Of a stretch of 64,000 nucleotides of DNA, positions 1 to 42,389 are shown piece by piece. Origin of the DNA: Neoechinorhynchus agilis. Its lineage: Eukaryota > Animalia > Acanthocephala. The stretch is from the NCBI GenBank assembly GCA_051530055.1, contig JBMGUZ010000005.1:1-64000 (forward strand). The letters are read 5' to 3'. Position numbers and translations under genes: made by a program. The notes under the pieces are model-generated. The model ran no database searches, had not been told where the DNA came from, and was given only the letters and a program-made list of their open reading frames with translations. Every line of letters starts with the position of its first letter. Positions within the stretch are counted from its first letter, which is position 1.

Positions 1-113
1 CACCAATCTTACTACTCTCATAGCTGTTGAACCCCAAATATGCTAAGATTTTAACACCACTATTGCACATTCTACCCTTTATGTGTTTTCTCTAACCTAT
101 AATTTTAACCACG
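1..113 (-). rRNA. rrnS: 5' portion of mitochondrial small-subunit rRNA (truncated by window edge)
   Basis: Directly downstream of trnM in the expected order. The minus strand ends ...AAGATTGGTG at base 1, where the conserved GTGCCAGC motif would be expected to start. Mainly positional. Confidence 0.5.
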
Positions 114-165
114 TGAGGGTAACATCTCAGAGGCATGAACCCTGCAGCTCCTATCGCCCGCCCTC
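114..165 (-). tRNA. trnM: mt tRNA-Met (CAT)
   Basis: Anticodon arm CAGGG-TTCATGC-CTCTG; acceptor GAGGG/CCCTC. Confidence 0.7.
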
Positions 166-438
166 AAAAAATTCTCTCATTTACCGTGAAAAGTTGGCAC
201 ACACCAAAAACCAGCTCAAAAAAAACTTTTTAAAAAAAACGAGTTTTTTTTAACAGTATATTTTTTTATGAATGTCTGTTTTTAACGCACTAATAATTTA
301 TTAAAAAAATTTTATTTTTAAAATTTGAAAAAAATTTACACTAAATTGACCTTTTGACCCCTAAATCGGCATCATGAATATAAATACTTATAGAAAAATT
401 AGAAAAAATTTCTCTTAATTCACTGCTACTTTGCACAC
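166..438. other. mitochondrial non-coding region between trnI and trnM
   Basis: AT-rich with A/T homopolymer runs, no ORF; position matches the acanthocephalan second NCR. Confidence 0.55.
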
Positions 439-478
439 ACCCTCAGCCAGTTTTGACATCAACAAAAAAAATAGAGAG
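439..478 (-). tRNA. trnI: mt tRNA-Ile (GAT), apparently armless (~40 nt)
   Basis: Anticodon arm TTTTG-TTGATGT-CAAAA; acceptor CTCTC/GAGGG; starts immediately after the nad1 stop. Confidence 0.6.
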
Positions 479-1366
479 TTAAACCAACCCCCACTCTACC
501 AGCATGCTAATCATTACAGCTGGTATCAGAATCTTCCACCTTAAAAGCATCAGTAAATCATACCGAAAACGTGGGAGGGACAACCGCAACCAACTAAAAA
601 CATATACAACTAAAAAAATCAGAACAAATCTAAAAGACCCCAATAGTAAATAACTGATTAAAATACTATACACTCTTATAAAGCCATATTCACCTAAAAA
701 CATAAAAGCAAAAACTAAACCCCCTAACTCAGTAACCCCGCCAGAAACCAACTCAGACTCCCCCTCCATAAAATCAACAGGCGTCCGATTAACCTCTATA
801 ATAACACCAATTAACAACAAGGGAAAATACAAGAAAAGCACTAAACCTACAACGCCTGAGAGGCGAAAAATGCTTACAGAAGAAAACACAACTATAAGCA
901 ACAATAAGCCAATCACTACTTCATAACTGATCATTTGTGCCACAGAACGTAAAACCCCGACAACCCTGTAGACTCCGCCACTAAATAAACCCATAGTAAA
1001 TACCCCCACAACTCTAAACCCCGCCACAAACAAAATAACCAAAACAAAAGGCATCCTCTCCATGCCACCCCTCAGCCTTACCACAATAACCCAAGAAAAA
1101 ATTATACAACAAAAAACAATAACACCGCCCAGCAATACCGAAAAAGAACTAGACATAGCGGGTAGGGCGTAAGACTTTATAAACAACTTAACCCCATCAA
1201 CCAAAGGTTGAACCACCCCGCCGATAAACACCTTATTTGGGCCCTTACGAACTTGCCCGTAAGCCAAAACCTTACGGTCTAATAGAGTAAAAAAGGCAAC
1301 TCTAAGTAAAATCAACAATACTACAACAATAACTCTAAACAACAAACGGATTTCAAGGTTAAACAC
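479..1366 (-). CDS. nad1: NADH dehydrogenase subunit 1
   Basis: RKVLAYGQVRKGPNKV, QPLVDGVKL, NRTPVDFMEGESELVSG and PRFRYD motifs; TAA stop. Confidence 0.97.
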   Translation of the reverse strand: MFNLEIRLLFRVIVVVLLILLRVAFFTLLDRKVLAYGQVRKGPNKVFIGGVVQPLVDGVKLFIKSYALPAMSSSFSVLLGGVIVFCCIIFSWVIVVRLRGGMERMPFVLVILFVAGFRVVGVFTMGLFSGGVYRVVGVLRSVAQMISYEVVIGLLLLIVVFSSVSIFRLSGVVGLVLFLYFPLLLIGVIIEVNRTPVDFMEGESELVSGGVTELGGLVFAFMFLGEYGFIRVYSILISYLLLGSFRFVLIFLVVYVFSWLRLSLPRFRYDLLMLLRWKILIPAVMISMLVEWGLV

Positions 1367-2444
1367 CCACTAAAGCCATAAGTAAAATAACACCAAAATA
1401 AAGACTCATAAAAAGAGGAGACAACTCTCTGTAGGGGTACTCCACCGATTCACCGCCCAAAAAAACTAACATAATAAAACTAACACCTAAAACAACCACC
1501 ATTAGCTTGTACAAAACTCAATAAACTATAGAACCCTTAAACTTAAACCTAAACAAACTAAAAATAGATAAAACCCCTACAGCCCCTAGTATCAAAATAA
1601 CACCGCCTAGCTTCCTATTAACTGACCGTAAAATGCAATAAGCAAATAAAAAATACCACTCAGGTTTGATATGCGAAGGAGTGCTTAAATAGTCAACCTC
1701 CTCAAAATTTGTCTCATCCATAAACCAATACACAGAGACAAACACCCCAAACCAAAAAAGCACTGTAATGCCCCCAAGACCAAACAAGTCTTTTCAAACA
1801 TATAAAGGACTAAACTCCAACTTATCAGACCTGGAAAAAACACCCAGGGGGTTAGAACTACCTTTCTCGTGCAATAAGAATAAATGGATTGCAATAAAAA
1901 ACCCCATAACTAACGATAAAATATAATGTAACCTAAAAAATCGAACCAATCTAACTACCCCCGCAGTTATTGAACCCCACAAAACGCCAGTGATTAAACC
2001 CCCTACCACTGGTATAGCGCCCAATATTCTTGTCACCACAGTCATACCTCAGTAAGATATTTGCCCCCAAGGTAGCACATAGCCCATAAAAGCCACCCCT
2101 ATAACAACCATCATAATAAACACACCACTAAGTCAGACTTTCTTTATTTTAACCCCAGAATAAATAAGCCCCTTAAAAATATGTAAATAAATAAATAAAA
2201 ACATCACCGTAGCCCCAAAGGAGTGTAAAAACCGTACAATTCAACCACAATACACTTCTTTTATAATATACACCACCCTACTATAGCCGCCGTCCAAATC
2301 TACGTAATAAAACAGCCTTAATAAGACACCCGAGACCACTTGCACCCCATAAACAACACCTAAAATAGAACCAAAATTATAACTCGCATTCAAATTTGTT
2401 GGGGTTGGTAAATTTAACAAACTTAACTTAACTATCTTAACCAC
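1359..2444 (-). CDS. cob: cytochrome b
   Basis: One open frame in code 5 (track pieces joined through TGA=Trp). LPTP..NFGSILG, LPWGQMSYWGMTV and [20 protein letters not shown]; TAA at 1359-1361. Confidence 0.97.
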
Positions 2445-2445
2445 C

Positions 2446-2495
2446 CATCAAAAATCTTAGACCCCCAAAGCCCATATTTAAATAAACTTTTTGAT
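2446..2495 (-). tRNA. trnP: mt tRNA-Pro (TGG)
   Basis: Anticodon arm TGGGC-TTTGGGG-GTCTA at 2458-2474; ends approximate. Confidence 0.6.
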
Positions 2496-2555
2496 GTAAA
2501 CAACAGATATTTGAAACTTAAATCCAACTCATCCCATCTGACATTTGTTTAATTA
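2496..2555 (-). tRNA. trnL2: mt tRNA-Leu(UUR) (TAA)
   Basis: Anticodon arm TTGGA-TTTAAGT-TTCAA at 2511-2527; ends approximate. Confidence 0.6.
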
Positions 2556-2561
2556 ACACAT

Positions 2562-4058
2562 CTAAGGCCTTAAAACAAATAAAACTACCATAACAAGCCC
2601 ACTTGCAAATAGACAAAAAAACATAATTCACCGGTACCACATCATAATAACCCTGTAAAACCCCCTGATAATAAGATTCAAACCCCTTATCATAACCCTA
2701 GAATCTAAACCGCTAAACACCCGAATAAATACCCAAACAACTAAGTCTATAAACACGCAGTATAAGCCCCCTAATATACTTAATAGAGAATTCCTATTCA
2801 CCGTAGCCCCGAACACTGCAACTGCAACTATAAACACCCAAAAAATAATAATTCTGGCGGGGTTAACAACACCCGGCCACGCATTTAAAAATCACCCCTC
2901 TACGACCAACCAACCTGAAACAGATATCACAGCCAAAACATACATTATACAATACAAACCCGGCACCCCGGCCACACCTGCGCTAGGGCTGATACCAACC
3001 CCTATTGCACCCTTAACCACTTTTAAAGAATAAATAAGACTAAAAGACAACACAAAATAAACAAAAAAGACCCAAAACAACCCCAAAAAGGAATCATTGA
3101 CCCACCTTAAAAGCACCTCTTTAGCTATAGAACCCCTAGAAAAAGGAACCCCGATTAAACTCACAACCCTAATAACAATAACAGCATAATTAATCTTCAA
3201 TCAAAAAGCAGCCCCCCTCCACAGCATCCGCCTATCCTGATTATGAGACATTAAAAAAACAATAACGCTTACTCTAACAAACAACAACCTCTTAAAAAAC
3301 CCATGTATGTACAAATGCAGATATGCGCAAGCCAAAACTCTACCCCTTAAAAACAAACTCAAAACACCTAAATGAAATAAAGTAGACAAAGCTACAATTT
3401 TCTTAACGTCCCTTTCAACCACACTAGAAAACCCCGCAATAAAAACTGTTAGCACGCCGAGCAGCCCTACGACTAGTAAAGTGTTAACATCCATAATCTC
3501 ATACGCGAATAAAACCATAAAAATACCAGCTGTGACCAGAGTAGAAGAATGAACTAAAGAAGAAACTGGTGTGGGGGCGGCTATCGCCATAGGCAACCAC
3601 ACCCTAAATGGGAACTGGGCCCTCTTACTCACTACACACATTAAAATTATTAGAGCTATATAAAAATCAAAAAGATTAACTCTAAGGCCCCTGAAAGCTA
3701 CAGAAAGATAAATAATAAAACCAATATCGCCAACCCGATTAATAACAATAGTGACTATAGAGCTAACCTTGCTGCCAAAATTACTGTAGTAATAAATCAA
3801 AACTAAGCTCACCACTCCTAAAATCTCCCACCCAATTAAAATTAAAATTCAATCCTTAAACATTAAAAAAATACATATACCTAAAACAAACAAGCCCACT
3901 ATCATATTAAAAGACCACCCATATTTTTCTATGTCCATGTACAACATTGTAAACAACAACACCATACCATAAATTAAAAATAAAACTCCCACTATGATCG
4001 ACTCACCTAGCCTATACGCAACCTCTGCCTCATAGGAAAACCACCACCCGACTATCAA
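2562..4058 (-). CDS. nad5: NADH dehydrogenase subunit 5
   Basis: Four track ORFs share one frame joined by TGA=Trp. NRVGD, [31 protein letters not shown] and KKIVALST; TAG at 2562-2564. Confidence 0.95.
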
Positions 4059-4095
4059 CTCTAATCACCAAATCACACCTCATAAAAACAACCCC
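4059..4095 (-). tRNA. trnH: possible highly reduced mt tRNA-His (GTG)
   Basis: 37-nt gap between nad4 and nad5 containing a GTGTGAT loop with a weak stem; expected position. Confidence 0.3.
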
Positions 4096-5417
4096 CTAAA
4101 AAACAAAATTATCCTTACCACTGATAAGGAGACAAAAATGACTATTCTTAACATACCGATTTACGCCACAAACCACAATTGTTAATCACCGATATACAAT
4201 CAACAATAAACCCATTGAAGCCCACACTACCGACCTGAACAAACCGACTATCAACGATACACTCTCTAGGGGTTTAGGGTCACATAATGCTCGAGAAACA
4301 ACCATTAATAAAACTTCCACATTAACCACTATAGAAAACATTAATATGAAAATAACAAAAATTAACATTATTTTATTAAAATACAACACCCCAAAAACTA
4401 AACCCAACTCGGCCCAAAAAGAACCCGATAAGGGAAATCTAAAATTCAAAATAAACATTAAAAACACTATAAACATCAGACCTGAGCCTCAAACCACCAC
4501 ATTTTTCAATACAAAAAATCTACGCCTCATATAAATGGAGGACAAACACCCTACCAAATAAAACAAACCCGTTGACAAAAATCTGTGAAATAAAACAACT
4601 AGTACTCTTAACATGACCAACCTGGATGAAGAAAACATAAACCCTAGTACCACAAAAGATATATGCACTACAGAGGAGTAAGCAACAAGAACCTTTAAAT
4701 CCCTAGTAAAATACATCTTGCACAAACAAGCCATAAGGCCCACTAACAAGACCCCCACAAAACAACTCAAAAATGCCCCTAGGTACACAATAAACAAGAA
4801 AACCCCATAACCCCCCATCTTAATCAACACTCCGGCTAGTAATATTGACCCCGCCACAGGAGACTCTACATGAACCAGAGGCAACCACTGATGCAGCCCC
4901 CACACCGGCACCTTTATAAAAAAGCCTAATAAGACCAAATAAACTAACCAACTAAAAATTTCTATACCGAGTACACCGCTAAAACCCACGTCAGCCCCAA
5001 AACTGTATAACCCCAATAATAGCAAAAACAGAGGAACAGAAAAAACGACCGTGTAAACAACAAAATTTTTTACAGTAAACAACCGCTCCTGATAACCAGA
5101 CCTACTAATAATAATATACAACAGACCCAATATAACAGACTCATAGCAAACGTAAAACACCAGCAAACTAGACCTCAAGAAAAACCAAACACATAAACCG
5201 ATCGTTACGACCACCACCAAAGCAGAGTAAAAATCCCATGTTTTACAAATAAATAAAGCTAGAAACAACAACACCATTAAAACAACCCACAACCTAAAAG
5301 AGCTAAACTCAACCCTCTCATAACTAAACCCCACCTAACCCCAGACCTTAAAAAACAAACAAATAGCAAGCCATAAAACACAACCAAAACAAAACAAACA
5401 AACCACCTTTCAACCAT
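4096..5417 (-). CDS. nad4: NADH dehydrogenase subunit 4 (5' end has an apparent frameshift or stop near 5330-5337)
   Basis: GYQERL, KVPVWGLHQWLPLVHVESPVAGSILLAGVLIKMGGYG and KVLVAYSSVVH; TAG at 4096-4098. Main frame is open only from GTG 5334. Confidence 0.92.
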
Positions 5418-5495
5418 TAACCCTGCCACTAAAACCCTAATTCTTTGACCTGCAAGCCACCCCTGGAAGAAACCACTTCTACCACTAAAATTAAC

Positions 5496-5687
5496 CTAAC
5501 CAAAGAACTTTAAAACCACTAAACACAACCTGACAGACAAAGAACCCACCCCAAAGACCAATAAAGAACCAAAAAAGGTAACTAAAACGCCCAAAACAAT
5601 AACCTCTATAGAGATAAAAACAGACAACAGCCTCATAGCCCTAAACATCATATATAACCCCAAACAAAACACCACAACAAAGTTCAA
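5496..5687 (-). CDS. nad4L: NADH dehydrogenase subunit 4L
   Basis: Short hydrophobic ORF (LSVFISMEV) between trnS2 and nad4; somewhat short (63 aa). Confidence 0.7.
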   Translation of the reverse strand: MNFVVVFCLGLYMMFRAMRLLSVFISIEVIVLGVLVTFFGSLLVFGVGSLSVRLCLVVLKFFG

Positions 5688-5730
5688 TAAGCTATCTTCA
5701 AAATAACCCCCTCCGGCTTCTTTGCCACCC
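5685..5730 (-). tRNA. trnS2: mt tRNA-Ser(UCN) (TGA)
   Basis: Anticodon arm GTTAT-TTTGAAG-ATAGC at 5691-5707; ends approximate. Confidence 0.55.
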
Positions 5731-5734
5731 CAGA

Positions 5735-5778
5735 CACACCTAACAGCTTAACTACAAAATAAGCCCGCTCATGCCATT
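5735..5778 (-). tRNA. trnT: mt tRNA-Thr (TGT)
   Basis: GCTTA/TAAGC stem around a TTTGTAG loop at 5746-5764; ends approximate. Confidence 0.5.
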
Positions 5779-5825
5779 TTAACCCTAGTCTACGAAAAAA
5801 ACTCGTGCAAAACACCTGAAATAAA
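5779..5825 (-). tRNA. trnE: mt tRNA-Glu (TTC)
   Basis: Anticodon arm AGTTT-TTTTCGT-AGACT at 5787-5803; ends approximate. Confidence 0.55.
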
Positions 5826-5868
5826 CCGAGTAACAAACCTCCTAGCACAAAAAACTATCAATCTTACT
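5826..5868 (-). tRNA. trnK: mt tRNA-Lys (TTT)
   Basis: TAGT-TTTTTGT-GCTA at 5843-5857; expected order V-K-E-T-S2. Confidence 0.45.
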
Positions 5869-5925
5869 CTTTGAGACAACCTGCTTAATGTAAATAAGCC
5901 ATTTTATTCCAACTCCCCCCAAGAT
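5869..5925 (-). tRNA. trnV: mt tRNA-Val (TAC)
   Basis: Anticodon arm GCTTA-TTTACAT-TAAGC at 5883-5899; ends approximate. Confidence 0.6.
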
Positions 5926-6283
5926 AATATATATACATAACATCTCAGAATATGTTACCCTCACCTATAATGTACTACCCCTAATCATATACCCCTATAG
6001 AGAGGGATTCCCATACACTAAACTGACTATCTCTCTTCTTTTTATATATTTTTTTTAATCCGAGATACACACTGGTGTGGTTAGTATTATTATCCTTATA
6101 TCAGCCCCATATATAAGCATAGAAGACTTTACCGCTTCCGGATACTATAAACAACCGCTGCCACTACCCTCTTAATCCTACCCCCATTTAATTTATAGAA
6201 TTAATATTAGGTGTTTTTGTTGTTAGCTCCGCGCTAAAAACATTATCTTCTTCAATCTTACAAATTTTTTGTACAAAAATTAA
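5926..6283. other. mitochondrial non-coding (control-like) region between trnW and trnV
   Basis: No gene; AT runs and short hairpins; position matches the acanthocephalan first NCR. Confidence 0.6.
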
Positions 6284-6344
6284 CGAAAGCCGCTTTAAAC
6301 GCGCCTCAAGTCTTGAAAACTCGTAGTCATATAACCTAGACTTC
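6284..6344 (-). tRNA. trnW: mt tRNA-Trp (TCA)
   Basis: Anticodon arm CGAGT-TTTCAAG-ACTTG; follows the nad3 stop. Confidence 0.7.
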
Positions 6345-6668
6345 CTATAGCGATCAATCGATTCTCCCGATTCACCACTCTCAAATAGTACCAAGTACAA
6401 AGACCCATAAGATCAAAGAAAACTCTAACAAAAACACCCTTCTAGAAGGAATAAGCATTGGCCTAAAAATCAATAGCACTAGCTCAAGGTCTATTAACAA
6501 AAATAACAGACTTAGAATAAAAAATCGTAAAGAAAAATACAGTCCTTTACAGACCATCCGATTTATGCCACACTCGAAAGTTTTCACCCTTCCGAGCTCT
6601 GGCAACGAACGAATAAATAAAATCATACTAGCTAAGACAAAAACCGCAGATATGATAACTATAAACAA
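6345..6668 (-). CDS. nad3: NADH dehydrogenase subunit 3
   Basis: FECG, FSLRFF and DLELVL; in code 5 ends GTIWEWWIGSIDWSL-TAG at 6345-6347. Confidence 0.93.
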
Positions 6669-6670
6669 AT

Positions 6671-7210
6671 CTAGGATCTATATAGCACCAATAAAGACAC
6701 ATAAATATAACCCTGTAAATAACAGACTAAGCACTCTAAAAGCAATACGCTTAGAACTCCTAACATTACAATGAAACTCATGGTTGAGCTAAAAAACAAC
6801 AATATAGCAAACAACACATGCCCCCTTGAGATATTAACCCCCAATCGGACGCCTAAAGTCAAAGGACGAACCGCCCACCTCACTGCCTCTAAAATAGGCA
6901 TAATAAACATGAATGCCCCCTCCAAACCAGCAGGTAAAAAATGTCTTACTAAACAACCAAACCCGATGTTAGAAAACAAAACCACCAAAGAAAACACCCA
7001 CAAAATAAAACTCACACACAAAATGCACCCCATGTGCATCGTGTAACAGGACCCCAGCAATAGGCCAGACACATTAACCATAATTAACGCTAACATAAAA
7101 CCAACCAACGCCACCCTTTTGGGGGAGGTAGAGGGCTGCATACCCCCTGTGCTTAAAGGCAAAACAAAAAACGGTACACACGACATCAAAAACAGAACCA
7201 AAACTATCAA
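6671..7210 (-). CDS. atp6: ATP synthase F0 subunit a
   Basis: RPLTLGVRLGVNIS.GH and LECLVCYLQGYIY; TTG start, TAG stop. Confidence 0.93.
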   Translation of the reverse strand: MIVLVLFLMSCVPFFVLPLSTGGMQPSTSPKRVALVGFMLALIMVNVSGLLLGSCYTMHMGCILCVSFILWVFSLVVLFSNIGFGCLVRHFLPAGLEGAFMFIMPILEAVRWAVRPLTLGVRLGVNISRGHVLFAILLFFSSTMSFIVMLGVLSVLLLECLVCYLQGYIYVSLLVLYRS

Positions 7211-7320
7211 ACCAGCCCACTAAAACTGCCACCCCTGAAAGAACCCCTGGGGGAACAAGCCGCCCAAGTAGAACACACGTAAATTAAAACCCATAACACA
7301 ACAATCAATATAAGAACCAT
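7204..7320 (-). CDS. atp8: putative ATP synthase F0 subunit 8 (38 aa)
   Basis: ATG...TGA TAG in code 5: MVLMLIVVLWVLIYVCSTWAACSPSGSFSGGSFSGLVW. Lies between trnD and atp6 with a 7-nt TTGATAG overlap; lacks MPQL. Confidence 0.55.
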
Positions 7321-7362
7321 TAGGGGGACCGCCGAGGGCTAGACACACCCTTAAAACCCCTA
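7321..7362 (-). tRNA. trnD: mt tRNA-Asp (GTC), apparently armless (~42 nt)
   Basis: Anticodon arm AGGGT-GTGTCTA-GCCCT; acceptor TAGGGG/CCCCTA. Confidence 0.65.
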
Positions 7363-7365
7363 AAC

Positions 7366-7596
7366 CTAGAACGACCGTATGCAAACCCCGTCCTTAGACA
7401 TCCTAAACCTAATAAAAACAAACCCCGCAGCAACTAACACCCTCAGCAGCCCCAAAAACACCCCCACCGATTGAAGCCTTTCCCCTAAAACAGTGTAACT
7501 CAATATGGCCTCTTTAGAAGACCTAGCCCACCTTGATCAGATAAAAACCCCCAAGATAAAATTAAAAAAAGAGCCACCTAACGAAGACCAAAGGTT
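7366..7596 (-). CDS. nad6: NADH dehydrogenase subunit 6, 3' part (cut by the satellite junction)
   Basis: 76 open codons in code 5 ending ...GFVFISFSMSKDGVCMRSF-TAG; expected position upstream of trnD. Confidence 0.7.
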
Positions 7597-10500
7597 CCGT
7601 TTGATGGAATTTTGTAGGGAAAGGACGATTATAAACGGTTAGGCATTAACCTGGAACGGCCCTAGTATCTCTTTATGAGAAAGCTCTTGCCACCCGTTTG
7701 ATAGAATTTTGTAGGGAAAAGGACGTTATAAACGGTTGAGCATTAACCTGGCACGGAGAATTCTTCTCGTAAAAGCCAAAAAGAAGGTGGTCAATTCCTC
7801 CTCAGATCTAAGGCCAATTTCCATTCAGAACGCCCTAGTATCTCTTTATGAGAGAGCTCTTGCCACCCGTTTGATGGAATTTTGTAGGGAAAAGGACGTT
7901 ATAAACGGTTGAGCATTAACCTGGCACGGAGAATTCTTCTCGTAAAAGCCAAAAAGAAGGTGGTCAATTCCTCCTCAGTTCTTAGGCCAATTTCCACTCA
8001 GAACGCCCTAATATCTCTTTATGAGAAAGCTCTTGCCACCCATTTGATGGAATTTTGTAGGGAAAAGGACGTTATACACGGTTGAGCATTAACCTGGCAC
8101 GGAGAATTCTTCTCGTAAAAGCCAAAAAGAAGGTGGTTAATTCCTCCTCAGATCTTAGGCCAATTTATATTCAGAACGCCCTAGTATCTCTTTATGAGAG
8201 AGCTCTTGCCACCCGTTTGATGGAATTTTGTAGGGAAAAGGACGTTATAAACGGTTGAGCATTAACCTGGCACGGAGAATTCTTCTCGTAAAAGCCAAAA
8301 AAGAAGGTAATTCCTCCTCAGATCTTAGGCCGATTTCCATTCTGAACGCCCTAGTATCTCTTTATGAGAGAGCTCTTGCCACCCGTTTGATGGAATTTTG
8401 TAGGGAAAAGGACGTTATAAACGGTTGAGCATTAAACTGGCACGGAGAATTCTTCTCGTAAAAGCCAAAAAGAAGGTGGTCAATTCCTCCTCAGATCTTA
8501 GGCCAGTTTCCATTCTGAACGCCATAGTATCTCTTTATGAGAAAGCTCTTGCCACCCGTTTGATGGAATTTTGTAGGGAAAAGGACGTTATAAACGGTTG
8601 AGCATTAAACTGGCACGGAGAATTCTTCTCGTAAAACAAAAGAAGAATTGGTCAATTCCTTCTCCAACTCTTGAAAACCCGAACCTCCATTCAGAACGCC
8701 CTAGTATCTCCTTATGAGAGCTCTTGCCACCCGTTTGATGGAATTTTGTAGGAAAAGGACGTTATAAACGGTTGAGCATTAACCTGGCGATTCTTCTCGT
8801 AAAAGCCAAAAAGAAGGTGGTCAATTCCTCCTCAGATCTTAGGCCAATTTCCATTCAGAACGCCTTAGTATCTCTTTATGAGAAAGCTCTTGCCACCCGT
8901 TTGATGGAATTTTGTAGGAAACAGTACGTTATAAACGGTTGAGCATTAACCTGGCACGGAGAATTCTTCTCGTAGAAGCCAAAAAGCAGGTGGTCAATTC
9001 CTCCTCAGATCTTAGGCCGATTTCCATTCTGAACGCCCTAGTATCTCTTTATGAGAGAGCTCTTGCCACCCGTTTGATGGAATTTGGCAAGGAAAAGAAC
9101 ATTATAAACGGTTGAGCATTAACCTGGCACGGAGAATTCTTCTCGTAAAAGCCAAAAAGAAGGTGGTCAATTCCTCCTCAGATCTTAGGCCAATTTCCAT
9201 TCAGAACGCCCTAGTATCTCTTTATGAGAGAGCTCTTGCAACCAGTTTGATGGAATTTTGTAGGGAAAAGGACGTTATAAACGGTTGAGCATTAACCTGG
9301 CACGGAGAATTCTTCTCGTAAAAGCCAAAAAGAAGGTGGTCAATTCCTCCTCAGATCTTAGGCCAATTTCCATTCAGAACGCCCTAATATCTCTTTATGA
9401 GAAAGCTCTTGCCACCCATTTGATGGAATTTTGTAGGGAAAAGGACGTTATAAACGGTTGAGCATTAACCTGGCACGGAGAATTCTTTTCGTAAAAGCCA
9501 AAAAGAAGGTGGTCAATTCCTCCTCAGATCTTAGGCCAATTTCCGTTCAAAGGAACACCCTAAGTCTCTTTATGAGAGAGCTCTTGCCACCCGTTTGATG
9601 GAATTTTGTAGGGAAAAGAACGTTATAAACGGTTCAGCATTAACCTGGCACGGAGAATTCTTCTCGTAAAAGCCAAAAAGAAGGTGGTCAATTCCTCCTC
9701 AGATCTTGGGCCAATTTCCATTCAGAACGCCCTAGTATCTCTTTATGAGAGAGCTCTTGCCACCCGTTTGATGGAATTTTGTAGGGAAAAGGACGTTATA
9801 AACGGTTGAGCATTAACCTGGCACGGAGAATTCTTCTCGTAAAAGCCAAAAAGAAGGTGGTCAATTCCTCCTCAGATCTTAGGCCAATTTCCATTCAGAA
9901 CGCCTAGTATCTCTTTATGAGAGAGCTCTTGCCACCCGTTTGATGGAATTTCTTATGGAAAAGGACGTTATAAACGGTTGAGCATTAACCTGGCACGGAG
10001 AATTCTTCTCGTAAAAGCCAAAAACAAGGTGGTCAATTCCTCCTCAGATCTTGGGCCAATTTCCATTCAGAACGCCCTAGTATCTCTATATGAGAAAGCT
10101 CTTGCCACCCGTTTGATGGAATTTTGTAGGGAAAGGGACGTTATAAACGGTTGAGCATTTACCTGGCACGGAGAATTTTTCTCGTAAAAGCCAAAAAGAA
10201 GGTGGTCAATTCCTCCTCAGATCTTAGGCCAATTTCCATTCTGAACGCCCTAGTATCTCTTTATGAGAGAGCTCTTGCCACCCGTTTGATGGAATTTTGT
10301 AGGAAGGGACGTTATAAACGGTTGAGCATTAACCTGGCACGGAGAATTCTTCTCGTAAAAGCCAAAAAGAAGGTGGTCAATTCCTCCTCAGATCTTAGGC
10401 CGATTTTCATTCGTTTCTAGTATCTCTTTATGAGAGAGCTCTTGCCACCCGTTTGATGGAATTTTGTAGGGAAAAGGACGTTATAAACGGTTGAGCATTA

Positions 10501-13500
10501 ACCTGGCACGGAGAATTTTTCTAGTAAAAGCCAAAAAGAAGGTGGTCAATTCCTCCTCAGATCTTAGGCCAATTTCCATTCAGAACGCCCTAGTATCTCT
10601 TTATGAGGAAGCTCTTGCCACCCGTTTGATGGAATTTTGTAGGGAAAAGGACGTTATAAACGGTTGAGCATTAACCTGGCACGGAGAATTCTTCACGTAA
10701 AAGCCAAAAGAAGGTGGTCAATTCCTCCTCAGATCTTAGGCCAATTTCCATTCAGAACGCCCTAGTATCTCTTTATGAGAGAGCTCTTTGTAATTTGATG
10801 GAATTTTGTAGGGAAAAGGACGTTATAAACGGTTGAGCATTAACCTGGCACGGAGAATTCTTCTCGTAAGCCAAAAAGAAGGTGGTCAATTCCTCCTCAG
10901 ATCTTAGGCCAATTTCCATTCAGAACGCCCTAGTATCTCTTTATGAGAGAGCTCTTGCCACCCGTTTGATGGAATTTTGTAGGGAAAAGGACGTTGTAAA
11001 CGGTTGAGCATTAACCTGGCACGGAGAATTCTTCTCGTAAAAGCCAAAAAGAAGGTGGTCAATCCCTCCTCAGATCTTAGGCCAATTTCCATTCAGAACG
11101 CCTTAGTATCTCTTTATGAGAAAGCTCTTGCCACCCATTTGATGGAATTTTGTAGGGAAAAGGACGTTATAAACGGTTGAGCATTAACCTGGCACGGAGA
11201 ATTCTTCCAGTAAAAGCCAAAAAGAAGGTGGTCAATTCCTCCTCAGATCTTAGGCCAATTTCCATTCAGAACGCCTTAGTATCTCTTTATGAGAAAGCTC
11301 TTGCCACCCATTTGATGGAATTTTGTAGGGAAAAGGACGTTATAAACGGTTGAGCATTAACCTGGCACGGAGAATTCTTCTCGTAGAAGCCAAAAAGTAG
11401 GTGGTCAATTCCTCCTCAGATCTTAGGCCAATTTCCATTCAGAACGCCTTAGTATCTCTTTATGAGAAAGCTCTTGCCACACGTTTGATGGAATTTTGTA
11501 GGGAAAAGGACGTTATAAACGGTTGAGCATTAACCTGGCACGGAGAATTCTTCTCGTAAAAGCCAAAAAGAAGGTGGTCAATTCCTCCTCAGATCTTAGG
11601 CCAATTTCCATTCAGAACGCCCTAGTATCTCTTTATGAGAAAGCTCTTGCCACCCGTTTGTAGGAATTTTGTAGGAAAAAGGACGTTATAAACGGTTGAG
11701 CATTAACCTGGCACGGAGAATTCTTCTCGTAAAAGCCAAAAAGAAGGTGGTCAATTCCTCCTCAGATCTTAGGCCAATTTCCATTCAGAACGCCCTAGTA
11801 TCTCTTTATGAGAGAGCTCTTGCAACCCGTTTGATGGAATTTTGTATGGAAAAGGATGTTATAAACGGTTGAGCATTAACCTGGCACGGAGAATTCTTCT
11901 CGTAGAAGCCAAAAAGTAGGTGGTCAATTCCTCCTCAGATCTTAGGCCAATTTCCATTCAGAACGCCTTAGTATCTCTTTATGAGAAAGCTCTTGCCACA
12001 CGTTTGATGGAATTTTGTAGGGAAAAGGACGTTATAAACGGTTGAGCATTAACCTGGCACGGAGAATTCTTCTCGTAAAAGCCAAAAAGAAGGTGGTCAA
12101 TTCCTCCTCAGATCTTAGGCCAATTTCCATTCAGAACGCCCTAGTATCTCTTTATGAGAAAGCTCTTGCCACCCGTTTGATGGAATTTTTGGGAAAAAGG
12201 ACATTTATAAACGGTTGAGCATTAACCTGGCACGGAGAATTCTTCTCGTAAAAGCCAAAAGAAGGTGGTCAATTCCTCCTCAGATCTTAGGCAATTTTCC
12301 ATTCAGAACGCCCTAGTATCTCTTTATGAGAAAGCTCTTGCCACACGTTTGATGGAATTTTGTAGGGAAAAGGACGTTATACACGGTTGAGACTTAACCT
12401 GGAACGGAGAATTCTTCTCGTAAAAGCCAAAAAGAAGGTGGTCAATTCCTCATCAGATCCTAGGCCAGTTTCCATTCTGAACGCCATAGTATCTCTTTAT
12501 GAGAAAGCTCTTGCCACACGTTTGATGGAATTTTGTAGGGAAAAGGACGTTATACACGGTTGAGCATTAACCTGGCACGGAGAATTCTTCTAGTAAAAGC
12601 CAAAAAGAAGGTGGTCAATTCCTCCTCAGATCTTAGGCCAATTTCCATTCAGAACGCCCTTAGTATCTCTTTATGAGAGAGCTCTTGCCACGTTTGATGG
12701 AATTTTGTAGGAAAAGGACGTTATAAACGGTTGAGCATTAACCTGGCACGGAGAATTCTTCTCGTAAAAGCCAAAAAGAAGGTGGTCAATTCCTCCTCAG
12801 ATCTTAGGCCAATTTCCATTCAGAACGCCCTAGTATCTCTTTATGAGAAAGCTCTTGCCACCCGTTTGATGGAATTTTTTAGGAAAAAGGACGTTATAAA
12901 CGGTTGAGCATTAACCTGGCACGGAGAATTCTTCTCGTAAAAGCCAAAAAGAAGGTGGTCAATTCCTCCTCAGATCTTAGGCCAATTTCCATTCAGAACG
13001 CCTTAGTATCTCTTTATGAGAAAGCTCTTGCCACCCGTTTGATGGAATTTTTTAGGAAAAAGGACGTTATAAACGGTTGAGCATTAACCTGGCACGGAGA
13101 ATTCTTCTCGTAGAAGCCAAAAAGTAGGTGGTCAATTCCTCCTCAGATCTTAGGCCAATTTCCATTCAGAACGCCTTAGTATCTCTTTATGAGAAAGCTC
13201 TTGCCACACGTTTGATGGAATTTTGTAGGGAAAAGGACGTTATAAACGGTTGAGCATTAACCTGGCACGGAGAATTCTTCTCGTAAAAGCCAAAGAAGGT
13301 GGTCAATTTCTCACTCAGATCTTAGGCCAATTTCCATTCAGAACGCCTTAGTATCTCTTTATGAAAGCTCTTGCCACCCGTTTGATGGAATTTTTAGGAA
13401 AAAGGACGTTATAAACGGTTGAGCATTAACCTGGCACGGAGAATTCTTCTCGTAAAAGCCAAAAGAAGGTGGTCAATTCCTCCTCAGATCTTAGGCCAAT

Positions 13501-16500
13501 TTCCATTCAGAACGCCTTAGTATCTCTTTATGAGAAAGCTCTTGCCACACGTTTGATGGAATTTTGTAGGGAAAAGGACGTTATAAACGGTTGAGCATTA
13601 ACCTGGCACGGAGAATTCTTCTCGTAAAAGCCAAAAAGAAGGTGGTCAATTCCTCCTCACATCTTAGGCCAATTTCCATTCAGAATGCCCTAGTATCTCT
13701 TTATGAGAAAGCTCTTGCCACCCATTTGATGGAATTTTGTAGGGAAAAGGACGTTATAAACGGTTGAGCATTAACCTGGCACGGAGAATTCTTCTCGTAA
13801 AAGCCAAAATGAAGGTGGTCAATTCCTCCTCAGATCTTAGGCCAATTTCCATTCAGAACGCCCTAGTATCTCTTTATGAGAAAGCTCTTGCCACCCGTTT
13901 GATGGAATTTTTTAGGGAAAAGGACGTTATAAACGGTTGAGCATTAACCTGGCACGGAGAATTCTTCTCGTAAAAGCCAAAAAAGAAGGTGGTCAATTCC
14001 TCCTCAGATCTTAGGCCAATTTCCATTCAGAACGCCTTAGTATCTCTTTATGAGAAAGCTCCTGTTACCTGTTTGATGGAAGTTTGTAGGAAAAGGGCGT
14101 GCCAGGTTAATGCTCAACCGTTTATAACGTCCTTTTCCCTACAAAATTCCATCAAACGTGTGGCAAGAGCTTTCTCATAAAGAGATACTAAGGCGTTCTG
14201 AATGGAAATTGGCCTAAGATCTGAGGAGGAATTGACCACCTACTTTTTGGCTTCTACGAGAAGAATTCTCCGTGCCAGGTTAATGCTCAACCGTTTATAA
14301 CGTCCTTTTTCCTAAAAAATTCCATCAAACGGGTGGCAAGAGCTTTCTCATAAAGAGATACTAAGGCGTTCTGAATGGAAATTGGCCTAAGATCTGAGGA
14401 GGAATTGACCACCTTCTTTTTGGCTTTTACGAGAAGAATTCTCCGTGCCAGGTTAATGCTCAACCGTTTATAACGTCCTTTTTCCTAAAAAATTCCATCA
14501 AACGGGTGGCAAGAGCTTTCTCATAAAGAGATACTAGGGCGTTCTGAATGGAAATTGGCCTAAGATCTGAGGAGGAATTGACCACCTTCTTTTTGGCTTT
14601 TACGAGAAGAATTCTCCGTGCCAGGTTAATGCTCAACCGTTTATAACGTCCTTTTCCTACAAAATTCCATCAAACGTGGCAAGAGCTCTCTCATAAAGAG
14701 ATACTAAGGGCGTTCTGAATGGAAATTGGCCTAAGATCTGAGGAGGAATTGACCACCTTCTTTTTGGCTTTTACTAGAAGAATTCTCCGTGCCAGGTTAA
14801 TGCTCAACCGTGTATAACGTCCTTTTCCCTACAAAATTCCATCAAACGTGTGGCAAGAGCTTTCTCATAAAGAGATACTATGGCGTTCAGAATGGAAACT
14901 GGCCTAGGATCTGATGAGGAATTGACCACCTTCTTTTTGGCTTTTACGAGAAGAATTCTCCGTTCCAGGTTAAGTCTCAACCGTGTATAACGTCCTTTTC
15001 CCTACAAAATTCCATCAAACGTGTGGCAAGAGCTTTCTCATAAAGAGATACTAGGGCGTTCTGAATGGAAAATTGCCTAAGATCTGAGGAGGAATTGACC
15101 ACCTTCTTTTGGCTTTTACGAGAAGAATTCTCCGTGCCAGGTTAATGCTCAACCGTTTATAAATGTCCTTTTTCCCAAAAATTCCATCAAACGGGTGGCA
15201 AGAGCTTTCTCATAAAGAGATACTAGGGCGTTCTGAATGGAAATTGGCCTAAGATCTGAGGAGGAATTGACCACCTTCTTTTTGGCTTTTACGAGAAGAA
15301 TTCTCCGTGCCAGGTTAATGCTCAACCGTTTATAACGTCCTTTTCCCTACAAAATTCCATCAAACGTGTGGCAAGAGCTTTCTCATAAAGAGATACTAAG
15401 GCGTTCTGAATGGAAATTGGCCTAAGATCTGAGGAGGAATTGACCACCTACTTTTTGGCTTCTACGAGAAGAATTCTCCGTGCCAGGTTAATGCTCAACC
15501 GTTTATAACATCCTTTTCCATACAAAATTCCATCAAACGGGTTGCAAGAGCTCTCTCATAAAGAGATACTAGGGCGTTCTGAATGGAAATTGGCCTAAGA
15601 TCTGAGGAGGAATTGACCACCTTCTTTTTGGCTTTTACGAGAAGAATTCTCCGTGCCAGGTTAATGCTCAACCGTTTATAACGTCCTTTTTCCTACAAAA
15701 TTCCTACAAACGGGTGGCAAGAGCTTTCTCATAAAGAGATACTAGGGCGTTCTGAATGGAAATTGGCCTAAGATCTGAGGAGGAATTGACCACCTTCTTT
15801 TTGGCTTTTACGAGAAGAATTCTCCGTGCCAGGTTAATGCTCAACCGTTTATAACGTCCTTTTCCCTACAAAATTCCATCAAACGTGTGGCAAGAGCTTT
15901 CTCATAAAGAGATACTAAGGCGTTCTGAATGGAAATTGGCCTAAGATCTGAGGAGGAATTGACCACCTACTTTTTGGCTTCTACGAGAAGAATTCTCCGT
16001 GCCAGGTTAATGCTCAACCGTTTATAACGTCCTTTTCCCTACAAAATTCCATCAAATGGGTGGCAAGAGCTTTCTCATAAAGAGATACTAAGGCGTTCTG
16101 AATGGAAATTGGCCTAAGATCTGAGGAGGAATTGACCACCTTCTTTTTGGCTTTTACTGGAAGAATTCTCCGTGCCAGGTTAATGCTCAACCGTTTATAA
16201 CGTCCTTTTCCCTACAAAATTCCATCAAATGGGTGGCAAGAGCTTTCTCATAAAGAGATACTAAGGCGTTCCAGGTTAATGCTCAACCGTTTATAACGTA
16301 TTTTCCCTACAAAATTCCATCAAACGGGTGGCAAGAGCTTTCTCATAAAGAGATACTAAGGCGTTCTGAATGGAAATTGACCTAAGATCTGAGGAGGAAT
16401 TGACCACCTTCTTTTTGGCTTTTACGAGAAGAATTCTCCGTGCCAGGTTAATGCTCAACCGTTTATAACGTATTTTCCCTACAAAATTCCATCAAACGGG

Positions 16501-41911: not shown

Positions 41912-42389
41912 TAAGCAAGATCTCGGACACTCTCCTGGCGATTCGTGATGCTCCGTGCTTGTTAGAAGTAATTAACAAATTCTCTTAATTTTTAAGCAAT
42001 AAACAAACATTTTTTGAACATTGAACTTTTATCTTGCCTTCCAGCTTTCTCATTCTAATATCCTAATACACGAAATCGAAGTTAACATTTTCCAATCATT
42101 CTCCATGACGCAGAAATGTCGCAAACTGCGGAGAAATCGACAATGACTACCGTACATGAAAATTGAAGGACAAAGTTAAAAAAATCCCTCACTTTTTTTC
42201 GAACTTTAACAGCATAAGAAAAAAATTTTCATATAAATTTTTTTGAGATAACCGGATCGTTTGGTAATTCTTGATCATTAAGTAACTGATATTGTAATAT
42301 CTCCAATATTTTATATCGTAGTCAAACTAAAAAACGTCGAATAGAAACTATTTACGTTTTGTAAGAAAAATGTTTCATATAATAATAAC

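What the first reader, a model, noticed from the sequence alone, without database searches (positions are those of the whole stretch)
7204..7320. Hidden atp8 candidate in a lineage usually annotated as lacking atp8
Seen: a 38-codon ATG-started ORF with an N-terminal hydrophobic helix sits exactly between trnD and atp6. It ends ...T TGA TAG, overlapping the atp6 start TTG ATA G by 7 nt. Established: trnD-atp8-atp6 with a 7-nt ATGATAA overlap is a widespread animal arrangement, and atp8 is commonly reported missing from acanthocephalan mitogenomes. The ORF track misses it because it is short and needs TGA=Trp. It lacks the MPQL motif, so homology searches may fail.
Basis: partly seen in the sequence, partly recalled or inferred. 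Interest (0 to 1): 0.7.

Follow-up and report, generated by a model that had tools for sequence, protein, structure and literature searches.

The report
Small conserved gene before atp6
A 38-codon reading frame between the tRNA-Asp gene and atp6 recurs in the same place and frame in every thorny-headed worm and bdelloid rotifer mitochondrial sequence I could fetch, so it is probably a very short, overlooked atp8-like gene in animals said to lack atp8, although the copy in this window is a mitochondrial fragment inside nuclear DNA.

Summary
The ORF is real. It lies on the minus strand (ATG 7320 to TGA-TAG 7204), starts at the 3' end of a 44-nt armless trnD(GTC), and overlaps a TTG-started atp6 by 7 nt. 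On this G/T-rich strand 38 open codons are expected 20-40% of the time, so the ORF alone proves nothing. The comparison with relatives does. The same layout (trnD, a start codon at once, an open frame, a stop 7-13 nt inside atp6) is present in Acanthogyrus (38 codons), another eoacanthocephalan (37), Pomphorhynchus (33) and a marine acanthocephalan-type transcript (42). Four bdelloid rotifer lineages have it too (30 codons each), which explains the 76-nt gap in the published Rotaria annotation. Joint chance of these open frames is about 3e-4 (acanthocephalans) to 1e-8 (all nine). Codon usage is coding-like in the ORF frame in all eight ORFs scored correctly. Against an ATP8 assignment: no similarity to known ATP8, no MPQL motif, no basic tail, very short, and pN/pS about 1 where measurable. 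I conclude it is a translated, fast-evolving ORF at the atp8 position and most likely a miniaturised atp8. A translational-coupling leader is the main rival. The window is a nuclear contig carrying NUMTs (or a chimeric assembly), not a mitogenome.

The parts
7204..7320 (-). 38-codon ORF plus TAG stop (ATG 7320-7318 ... TGA(W) 7209-7207, TAG 7206-7204): the atp8 candidate, an N-terminal hydrophobic helix followed by a Ser/Gly-rich uncharged tail
   Evidence: Translation; hydropathy; codon-frame score D=+5.6, within the range of real in-frame windows and above all off-frame windows; positional orthologues in L016, L001, L007 and L008
7320..7363 (-). trnD (anticodon GTC), 44 nt, lacking both D and T arms; its last base is the A of the ORF's ATG
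   Evidence: Manual stem search; RNA fold gives acceptor and anticodon arms; loop GTGTCTA is identical in Acanthogyrus L016; a 44-nt armless trnD is published for Pseudoacanthocephalus bufonis. ARAGORN does not call it. Alternative 3' ends at 7311-7315 are possible.
6671..7210 (-). atp6 (TTG start 7210-7208, TAG stop 6673-6671), 179 codons, in the -1 frame relative to the ORF
   Evidence: ORF map; 60% identity to Hebesoma violentum ATP6, Pfam PF00119 on hits; N-terminal alignment
7204..7210 (-). 7-nt overlap TTGATAG between the end of the ORF and the atp6 start
   Evidence: Sequence. Same 7-nt geometry in L016 (TTGGTAA), L001 and L008 (ATGGTAG); 13 nt in Pomphorhynchus
7366..7596 (-). 3' fragment of nad6 (about 75 codons at most, stop TAG 7368-7366), truncated where the 173-bp satellite begins
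   Evidence: C-terminus ...SMSKDGVCMRSF* is alignable with L001 ...ISQEGVSVRSC*; satellite similarity starts at 7597

Best explanation
The ORF is the nuclear-inserted (or mis-joined) copy of a real mitochondrial gene. That gene is a very short, fast-evolving protein gene occupying the trnD-atp6 gap in Acanthocephala and bdelloid rotifers, and it is most likely a miniaturised atp8. Proposed mechanism in the mitochondrion: (1) The polycistronic transcript is cut at trnD. This leaves an mRNA whose 5' end is the ORF's start codon and which continues through atp6 (inferred from the tRNA punctuation model; consistent with the metatranscriptome contig L008, which begins 7 nt before the ORF start and runs through atp6 into nad3). 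(2) The mitoribosome starts at this 5'-terminal codon and makes a 30-42-residue peptide with one N-terminal transmembrane helix and a short polar tail (the frame, length and codon usage are shown; translation itself is inferred). (3) It terminates 7-13 nt inside atp6 and re-initiates at the atp6 start, as in the overlapping atp8/atp6 bicistron of other animals (geometry shown; coupling inferred). (4) The peptide sits next to subunit a in the Fo sector as subunit 8 does (inferred from position and architecture only).
For: The architecture recurs in every relative retrieved. Acanthogyrus L016: trnD, then GTG, 38 codons, TTGGTAA overlap. Eoacanthocephalan L001: GTG, 37 codons, ATGGTAG overlap. 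Pomphorhynchus L003/L004/L007: trnD ends at 2222, ATG at 2223, 33 codons, 13-nt overlap. Acanthocephalan-type marine transcript L008: 42 codons, ATGGTAG overlap. Four bdelloid lineages: trnD, ATG, exactly 30 codons, 17-nt overlap. These match the unannotated 76-nt trnD-atp6 gap in the published Rotaria rotatoria table. Published acanthocephalan tables also show unexplained trnD-atp6 gaps of 59-129 nt in otherwise compact genomes. Open-frame probability per lineage from interval shuffles is 0.07-0.40, with a product of about 3e-4 for the five acanthocephalan-type loci and about 1e-8 for all nine. Codon-frame likelihood: the ORF frame scores as in-frame coding in all eight ORFs scored at the right coordinates, and each shifted frame is best fitted by its shifted model. 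Conditioned on being stop-free, p is about 0.05-0.14 (window), 0.02-0.03 (L001), 0.01 (L016), 0.10-0.13 (Pomphorhynchus), 0.001 (L008), and 0.01, 0.03 and 0.2 (bdelloids L010, L015, L005). Weak but non-random residue conservation among the three eoacanthocephalans: W19, S23 and L36 invariant without gaps, sum-of-pairs p=0.01, stricter null p=0.05. Only the ORF frame gives a positive ungapped BLOSUM score between window and Acanthogyrus. Bdelloids share M1, V2, W13, F28 and F30. All nine peptides have a hydrophobic N-half and a less hydrophobic C-half. The interval is less structured than shuffles, z=+1.96. From established knowledge (not tested here): atp8 lies directly upstream of and overlaps atp6 in most animals, trnD-atp8-atp6 is an old block, and the classic ATGATAA overlap also makes atp8 end in Trp-stop.
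Against: No similarity to ATP8. Pfam gave nothing at E<=10 for the four peptides scanned. PDB profile searches returned no ATP synthase chain. phmmer of the window peptide against 1.84 billion proteins gave one spurious hit. There is no MPQL motif. The window peptide has no charged residue, and relatives have only 0-3 basic residues. At 30-42 residues it is shorter than typical animal ATP8 (about 50-70, own knowledge). Acanthocephalan and bdelloid profiles do not match each other (hhalign probability 7%). The window-L001 pair alone is not above shuffles (z=0.7). pN/pS is about 1 in bdelloids. On a G/T-rich strand any frame tends to be open and hydrophobic. Translation and presence in complex V are untested. 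The copy in this window is in a NUMT or chimeric context and may not be expressed at all.
Confidence: 0.55

Rival explanations
1. The ORF is translated, but the peptide is not ATP synthase subunit 8. It could be a relic or leader ORF kept only because mitoribosomes load at the 5' end of the trnD-cleaved mRNA and must read through to the overlap to re-initiate on atp6. It could also be a lineage-specific small membrane protein with another role.
For: What is conserved is the frame, the length, the start at the tRNA boundary and the stop inside atp6, not the residues. pN/pS is about 1 in bdelloids. Amino-acid identity is about 22% between window and Acanthogyrus, against 57% for atp6. No ATP8 motif or profile hit, and no basic tail.
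Against: Exact length constancy (30 codons in four bdelloids at 47-69% nucleotide identity; 38/38/37 in eoacanthocephalans) and invariant Trp positions suggest some constraint on the peptide itself. A consistent helix-plus-tail layout is seen in all nine peptides. atp8 is known to be the fastest-evolving mitochondrial gene (own knowledge), so weak conservation is expected of a true atp8 as well.
Confidence: 0.22
2. The interval is a non-coding spacer (5' leader or processing spacer) and the open frame is a by-product of the A-poor, G/T-rich strand.
For: P(open) for the window interval alone is 0.2-0.4. Hydrophobic translations are the default on this strand. Sequence conservation is near noise.
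Against: The same frame is open in all nine lineages (joint probability about 1e-8; about 3e-4 for acanthocephalans alone), while the other frames carry 0-11 stops. Codon periodicity is significant after conditioning on being stop-free. Start codons sit exactly at the trnD boundary. There is no length variation among bdelloids despite about 50% nucleotide divergence.
Confidence: 0.1
3. The interval hides a tRNA or another structured RNA. Some published annotations place trnS2 between trnD and atp6.
For: Pseudoacanthocephalus bufonis and Micracanthorhynchina hemirhamphi are annotated with trnS2 in this interval. Acanthocephalan tRNAs are truncated and hard to detect.
Against: ARAGORN (mitochondrial mode, default and -ps) and Rfam find nothing in 7204-7320. 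The interval folds worse than shuffles, z=+1.96. trnS2(TGA) anticodon arms lie at the canonical site before nad4L in the window (about 5700) and in L001 (about 2720), and no TGA arm lies in the interval.
Confidence: 0.03
4. The ORF is the true N-terminus of atp6, joined to the annotated atp6 by a programmed -1 frameshift at the overlap.
For: atp6 is in the -1 frame relative to the ORF in all five acanthocephalan-type loci (overlaps 7, 7, 7, 13, 7). Acanthocephalan atp6 is short (about 170-190 aa).
Against: atp6 has its own start codon at the overlap (ATG in L001, Pomphorhynchus and L008; TTG in window and Acanthogyrus). It already begins with a hydrophobic helix that aligns with the first helix of relatives. 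There is no slippery heptamer at the site. Bdelloids use a different frame relation (17-nt overlap).
Confidence: 0.03

Closest known systems
Animal mitochondrial atp8 (ATP synthase subunit 8 / A6L) in the overlapping atp8-atp6 bicistron
   Same: Same strand and position directly upstream of atp6, preceded by trnD. Short overlap with the atp6 start in a different frame. The 7-nt geometry ends the upstream protein in Trp-stop. Single N-terminal transmembrane helix. Very fast sequence evolution.
   Different: 30-42 residues instead of about 50-70. N-terminus MV.../MM... instead of MPQ(L/M). No lysine/arginine-rich C-terminal tail. No Pfam ATP-synt_8 match.
Cryptic atp8 genes recovered in lineages once said to lack them (for example flatworms: Egger, Bachmann & Fromm 2017, cited in PMC9979467; Trichinella among nematodes, cited in PMC2784805)
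   Same: A short unannotated ORF in a lineage routinely annotated as 'lacking atp8', recognised by position, hydropathy and conservation among relatives rather than by BLAST.
   Different: I did not read those papers' criteria here. Those candidates are reported to keep more of the canonical features (own recollection, untested). The Syndermata ORF is shorter and motif-less.
The 'two putative atp8 genes' suggested for Leptorhynchoides thecatus (Steinauer et al. 2005), as cited in PMC6656981 and PMC10093747
   Same: An earlier suggestion that an acanthocephalan mitogenome may carry atp8 after all.
   Different: The paper is not held, so I could not check whether either candidate lies between trnD and atp6. 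Later acanthocephalan papers ignore it and annotate atp8 as lacking.
NUMTs (nuclear insertions of mitochondrial DNA)
   Same: The window has two mitochondrial-type blocks in nuclear-type DNA. One of 7.6 kb or more is truncated in nad6 against a satellite array. One of 1.56 kb has nuclear flanks on both sides.
   Different: All seven protein genes of the large block are intact under the mitochondrial code, so a recent insertion and an assembly chimera cannot be told apart from the sequence alone.

Membership tests
ATP synthase subunit 8 (atp8; Pfam ATP-synt_8) | Significant match to the family profile | tested here: not met
   hmmscan against Pfam-A at E<=10: no family for the window, L001, Pomphorhynchus or bdelloid L005 peptides. 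PDB profile searches gave no ATP synthase chain.
ATP synthase subunit 8 (atp8; Pfam ATP-synt_8) | N-terminal MPQ(L/M) motif | tested here: not met
   N-termini are MVLM (window), MFSV, MLVV, MMTL, MVMV and MV(C/M/F).
ATP synthase subunit 8 (atp8; Pfam ATP-synt_8) | Single N-terminal transmembrane helix | tested here: met
   Best 15-residue Kyte-Doolittle window starts at residue 1-6 in all nine peptides, mean 2.2-3.2. Caveat: hydrophobic translations are the default on this strand.
ATP synthase subunit 8 (atp8; Pfam ATP-synt_8) | Positively charged C-terminal extension | tested here: not met
   K+R+H is 0 in the window peptide and 0-3 in relatives.
ATP synthase subunit 8 (atp8; Pfam ATP-synt_8) | Gene directly upstream of atp6 on the same strand, overlapping its start | tested here: met
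   7-nt overlap in window, L016, L001 and L008; 13 nt in Pomphorhynchus; 17 nt in bdelloids.
ATP synthase subunit 8 (atp8; Pfam ATP-synt_8) | Reading frame conserved among relatives | tested here: met
   Open in 9 of 9 lineages, joint shuffle probability about 1e-8. Coding-like codon-frame scores in the ORF frame.
ATP synthase subunit 8 (atp8; Pfam ATP-synt_8) | Purifying selection on the protein (dN/dS < 1) | tested here: inconclusive
   Bdelloid pairs give pN 0.32-0.57 against pS 0.24-0.61 on 25 codons, near saturation. No close species pairs with differences were available for acanthocephalans; L003 and L004 are identical in the interval.
ATP synthase subunit 8 (atp8; Pfam ATP-synt_8) | Physical subunit of the Fo sector / peripheral stalk | not testable with these tools
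   Needs proteomics or a structure of purified complex V.
Mitochondrial tRNA-Asp | Anticodon GTC in a 7-nt loop closed by a 5-bp stem, plus a 7-bp acceptor stem | tested here: met
   Window 7363-7320: AGGGT/GTGTCTA/GCCCT and TTAGGGG/CCCCTAA. Equivalent arms in L016, L001, L003 and L005.
Mitochondrial tRNA-Asp | Recognition by a tRNA finder / cloverleaf with D and T arms | tested here: not met
   ARAGORN -mt does not call it and both arms are absent. The literature reports armless, hard-to-fold trnD in acanthocephalans.
NUMT | Mitochondrial-type sequence bounded by nuclear-type sequence, with gene truncation at the boundary | tested here: met
   nad6 is cut and satellite similarity begins at 7597. 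The second fragment 27773-29332 has non-mitochondrial flanks on both sides. An assembly chimera is not excluded for the large block.

The most novel reading that the evidence does not exclude
Rotifers and acanthocephalans (Syndermata) never lost atp8. They keep a miniaturised 30-42-residue subunit 8 in the trnD-atp6 gap. This would be the shortest animal ATP8, reduced to one transmembrane helix plus a stub, and translated from a leaderless bicistronic mRNA coupled to atp6. If so, the routine statement that atp8 is lacking in these phyla would be an annotation artefact.
Probability: 0.5. Interest if true: 0.7.

Novelty: new variant of a known kind. Interest (0 to 1): 0.62.

Why it matters
Every acanthocephalan and rotifer mitogenome paper I could read states that atp8 is absent, and gene-loss tallies for Bilateria inherit that statement. 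Many of the same papers leave an unexplained 59-129-nt hole between trnD and atp6. If that hole is a gene, several things follow. Gene content for two phyla needs correcting. A few 'trnS2' and over-long or over-short atp6 annotations at this spot may need revisiting. The supposed loss of a core Fo subunit in these animals disappears. ATP synthase biology would also gain a natural minimal subunit 8 showing how little of the protein is indispensable. The claim can be tested directly with existing Pomphorhynchus laevis transcriptome and proteome data and with cultured bdelloid rotifers.

Tried and rejected
(1) Reading the plus strand at the given coordinates: no ORF there; the feature is on the minus strand.
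(2) ARAGORN in bacterial mode found no tRNAs in the window. In mitochondrial mode it found W, V, L and P but not D. At -ps80 it calls tRNAs everywhere, which is uninformative.
(3) Rfam at E<=10 on 5400-7700: only a chance RNA-OUT hit inside atp6.
(4) Pairwise peptide similarity between window and L001: not above shuffles, z=0.7. The MAFFT nucleotide alignment of the two intervals was unreliable.
(5) Pfam scan of four of the peptides: nothing.
(6) phmmer of the window peptide against 1.84 billion representatives: one repetitive 409-aa hit, judged spurious.
(7) PDB profile searches and hhalign between the eoacanthocephalan and bdelloid profiles: nothing meaningful.
(8) Nei-Gojobori pN/pS on bdelloid ORFs: saturated, about 1, not informative in favour.
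(9) L002/L017 (Acanthogyrus contigs) and P0001 (Hebesoma) did not give the interval.
(10) My first reading of Pomphorhynchus, that the 82-nt gap left no room for an ORF, was wrong. trnD lies inside the apparent nad6 tail.
(11) The codon-frame run for L014 used wrong coordinates and should be ignored. Its ORF was located correctly afterwards.
(12) Steinauer et al. 2005 could not be read.
(13) Structure prediction was not attempted. A 38-residue single helix would not discriminate between the hypotheses.
Full report
**What is at the coordinates.** The plus strand of 7204-7320 holds no ATG-started ORF. The reverse complement does: ATG at 7320, 38 sense codons, then TAG at 7206-7204. Under the invertebrate mitochondrial code this translates to MVLMLIVVLWVLIYVCSTWAACSPSGSFSGGSFSGLVW. 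The penultimate codon is TGA, so a standard-code ORF finder stops one codon early.

The first ~7.6 kb of the window is strongly G/T-rich on the minus strand (T 0.42, G 0.27, A 0.21, C 0.11). On that strand it carries intact genes in the usual acanthocephalan order: a nad6 3' end, the interval in question, atp6, nad3, trnW, trnV, nad4L, nad4, nad5, trnL, trnP, cob and nad1. The best protein matches are Eoacanthocephala: atp6 is 60% identical to Hebesoma violentum, and cob is 63-68% identical to Hebesoma, Pallisentis and Acanthogyrus.

**The neighbours of the ORF.** The atp6 frame is open only from 7219. A TTG at 7210 followed by ATA gives an N-terminus of the same length as in relatives, and produces the 7-nt overlap TTGATAG with the ORF's TGA TAG.

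ARAGORN does not call a trnD, but a 44-nt armless tRNA is present at 7363-7320. It has the acceptor stem TTAGGGG/CCCCTAA, the anticodon stem AGGGT/GCCCT and the loop GTGTCTA with GTC, and it folds that way. The same loop sequence occurs in Acanthogyrus. A 44-nt trnD lacking both arms is published for Pseudoacanthocephalus bufonis.

**Is the ORF more than chance?** On its own it is not. Stop codons need A, which is rare on this strand. The per-codon stop probability is 0.041, so 38 open codons are expected with p = 0.20. Shuffling the interval itself gives 0.40, and 26% of off-frame codons inside the real genes lie in open stretches of at least 38 codons. Hydrophobic translations are likewise the default here. 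The question has to be settled by comparison with relatives.

**Relatives.** No nucleotide collection of animal mitogenomes was on hand, so I recovered contigs through atp6 and cob homologues.

| Locus | What it is | ORF start | Codons | Overlap with atp6 |
|---|---|---|---|---|
| L001 | Unnamed eoacanthocephalan, Logan assembly | GTG directly after trnD(GTC) | 37 (ends TTA TGG TAG) | 7 nt (ATG GTA G) |
| L016 | Acanthogyrus; its cob clusters with A. cheni | GTG directly after trnD | 38 (ends ATT TGG TAA) | 7 nt (TTG GTA A) |
| L003/L004/L007 | Pomphorhynchus-type mitogenomes | ATG at 2223; trnD ends at 2222 | 33 | 13 nt |
| L008/L009 | 978-nt marine metatranscriptome contig | GTG, 7 nt from the contig start | 42 (ends AGA TGG TAG) | 7 nt (ATG GTA G) |

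- In Pomphorhynchus I first thought the 82-nt nad6-atp6 gap left no room for an ORF. In fact the trnD anticodon arm (CGAGC/ATGTCTA/GCTTG) lies inside the apparent tail of nad6.
- The atp6 of L008 is closest to polymorphid acanthocephalans. The contig runs on through atp6 into nad3.
- In all five acanthocephalan-type lineages atp6 is in the -1 frame relative to the ORF.

**Bdelloid rotifers show the same thing.** A family of atp6 hits from environmental assemblies (L005/6, L010-13, L014, L015) has the gene order and gene sizes of the published Rotaria rotatoria mitogenome: nad6 129 aa, trnD, atp6 198 aa, nad1, cob 361 aa, nad4L 90 aa. Each locus has trnD(GTC), an ATG directly after it, exactly 30 codons, and a stop 17 nt inside atp6. 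The peptides are:

- MVCMLLFFLGLLWVYGMFSEVEIKGYEFNF
- MVMIFLMVVLFSWLNWVYGSVMNYNYDFTF
- MVFLLFFMIYLLWDLKLFMSLKFFMKNFNF
- MVCILLMVVLLLWNNWVQGKVSNSINDFIF

M1, V2, W13, F28 and F30 are invariant. The non-overlapping part is 93 - 17 = 76 nt, which is exactly the unannotated trnD-atp6 gap in the Rotaria table.

Published acanthocephalan tables show the same unexplained hole: Brentisentis 104 nt, Bolbosoma 82, Corynosoma 129, Moniliformis 59, and Pseudoacanthocephalus 85 followed by a 'trnS2' that overlaps atp6.

**Statistics across lineages.**

- *Open frames.* Shuffling each interval gives probabilities of 0.40, 0.21, 0.21, 0.19 and 0.08 that this frame is open in the five acanthocephalan-type loci, and 0.07-0.11 in the bdelloids. 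The product is about 3e-4 for the acanthocephalans and about 1e-8 for all nine, though not all are independent. The other two frames carry 0-11 stops.
- *Codon usage.* I built codon tables for frames 0, +1 and +2 from each genome's own genes and scored D = logL(frame 0) - max(logL of the other frames). Real 38-codon windows give D of about +8 to +9, and off-frame windows about -14 to -20. The ORFs give +5.6 (window), +8.1 (L001), +10.1 (Acanthogyrus), +6.2 (Pomphorhynchus), +18 to +19 (L008), and +9.9, +11.3 and +4.6 (bdelloids). When the intervals are read in shifted frames, the matching shifted model fits best.
- *Control for the stop-free bias.* Choosing a stop-free frame inflates D, so I conditioned the null models on having no stops. 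The nulls were RNA-gene and non-coding windows, Markov sequences and shuffles. This gives p of about 0.05-0.14, 0.02-0.03, 0.01, 0.10-0.13 and 0.001 for the acanthocephalan-type loci, and 0.01, 0.03 and 0.2 for the bdelloids. My own post-hoc Fisher combination for the five acanthocephalan-type loci is of the order of 1e-4 to 1e-5.
- *Residue conservation.* It is weak. Window against Acanthogyrus is about 22% identical, compared with 57% for atp6, but only the ORF frame gives a positive ungapped BLOSUM score (+25 against +5 and -38). The three eoacanthocephalan peptides share W19, S23 and L36 without gaps (sum-of-pairs p = 0.01; p = 0.05 under a within-halves shuffle).
- *Hydropathy.* All nine peptides have a hydrophobic N-half and a less hydrophobic C-half.

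**Rivals tested.**

- *A hidden tRNA or structured RNA.* Nothing was found by ARAGORN at default or -ps settings or by Rfam. The interval folds worse than its shuffles (z = +1.96). trnS2(TGA) anticodon arms sit at the canonical place before nad4L in the window and in L001, and none lies in the interval.
- *An atp6 N-terminal extension.* atp6 has its own start codon and its own first hydrophobic helix. The bdelloids use a different frame relation.
- *A nad6 continuation.* Three further stops lie between nad6's TAG and the ATG (sequence).

**What speaks against calling it atp8.** No profile or sequence similarity to ATP8 was found. There is no MPQL motif and no basic tail; the window peptide has no charged residue at all. 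The length is 30-42 residues. The eoacanthocephalan and bdelloid profiles do not match each other. In the bdelloids pN/pS is about 1: the closest pair has pN 0.32 and pS 0.24 over 25 codons, whereas atp6 has pN 0.10 and pS 0.52. Those values are near saturation and come from few sites, so they do not refute coding. What selection visibly preserves is the frame, the length, the start at the tRNA cut site and the stop inside atp6.

**Interpretation.** The best reading (confidence 0.55) is a translated, very fast-evolving small gene at the ancestral atp8 position. It would be expressed from a trnD-cleaved, leaderless bicistronic mRNA and translationally coupled to atp6, that is, a miniaturised atp8.

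The main rival (0.22) is that the ORF is translated only as a leader needed to deliver ribosomes to atp6, or that it encodes some other small membrane peptide. A chance spacer (0.10), a hidden RNA gene (0.03) and a frameshifted atp6 (0.03) are disfavoured.

The atp8 assignment rests on position, geometry and architecture. The family's sequence-defined features were tested and not met, so I describe it as working like atp8/atp6 rather than as a proven member.

**Context of this particular copy.** The window is not a mitogenome. The mitochondrial-type block ends inside nad6, where similarity to a 173-bp satellite begins at 7597. The array runs to 24593 and inverts near 14100.

A second mitochondrial fragment at 27773-29332 is 96.6% identical to 3199-4758 and has nuclear-type flanks. 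It differs by 53 substitutions and no indels, of which 39 are at third codon positions and 43 are transitions. So the contig is nuclear with NUMTs, or the large block is an assembly chimera. All seven genes of the large block are intact, so it is a faithful recent copy and a good proxy for the mitochondrial sequence. The ORF at 7204-7320 itself may never be expressed.

**Novelty.** All open papers I could search state that atp8 is lacking in acanthocephalans, bdelloids, monogononts and Seison. One notes that atp8 can be hard to identify. The only earlier hint is the 'two putative atp8 genes' of Leptorhynchoides thecatus (Steinauer et al. 2005), cited. I could not read that paper, so I cannot say whether it anticipates this position. 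Cryptic atp8 genes in 'atp8-less' lineages are a known kind of finding; this would be a new and unusually reduced variant spanning two phylum-level groups.

Noticed in passing
window 7597-24593: A 173-bp satellite array of about 17 kb (about 98 units, 91-96% matches) that switches orientation near 14100. It abuts the truncated nad6 end of the mitochondrial block directly.
   Followed up: partly
window 27773-29332: A second mitochondrial-derived fragment (nad4/nad5) in the opposite orientation, 96.6% identical to 3199-4758, with nuclear-type flanks. It has 53 substitutions and no indels; 39 are at third codon positions and 43 are transitions. Most of the divergence therefore arose under mitochondrial purifying selection, which suggests an older NUMT.
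   Followed up: partly
window 1-7596: All seven mitochondrial protein genes are intact under code 5, although the block is cut inside nad6 and joined to satellite DNA. This is either a very recent NUMT of 7.6 kb or more (the left end is beyond the window) or an assembly chimera.
   Followed up: partly
window 42001-44000 and 54001-56000: Local composition anomalies (GC skew +0.23 at 42-44 kb; GC 0.48 at 54-56 kb). They are not mitochondrial by blastn/tblastx against the mitochondrial block and L001.
   Followed up: no
L016:11650-12192 (Acanthogyrus) versus protein P0002: The published A. cheni ATP6 (163 aa) starts at an internal Met (MGFYVSV...). A TTG 18 codons upstream gives a protein of the usual length and the 7-nt overlap with the upstream ORF, so the deposited annotation is probably 5'-truncated.
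   Followed up: partly
proteins P0133 (Polyacanthorhynchus caballeroi, 230 aa) and P0129 (Pomphorhynchus bulbocolli, 209 aa): These deposited ATP6 proteins have N-terminal extensions of 20-50 residues compared with relatives. They probably read the trnD-atp6 interval in the atp6 frame, which would be annotation over-extension.
   Followed up: no
published tables read: In Pseudoacanthocephalus bufonis a 'trnS2' is annotated inside the trnD-atp6 interval, overlapping atp6 by 22 nt. Micracanthorhynchina hemirhamphi also has trnS2 there. These calls may be forced into the same unexplained gap and are worth re-examining.
   Followed up: no
protein P0138: A 'hypothetical protein GJ496_009066' of Pomphorhynchus laevis on a 111-kb nuclear contig is an atp6-derived ORF. 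Mitochondrial insertions therefore also occur in the other published acanthocephalan nuclear assembly.
   Followed up: no
window 5925-6283: About 360 nt between trnW and trnV has no assigned gene. This is the position of the non-coding region reported in most acanthocephalan mitogenomes. trnK, trnE and trnT were not located by ARAGORN.
   Followed up: no
L003 versus L004, 2170-2324: The trnD-ORF interval is identical in two Pomphorhynchus-type samples (SRR6218648 and SRR6218649), which do differ at a few sites in the flanking nad6 and atp6. There are too few differences for a test.
   Followed up: partly
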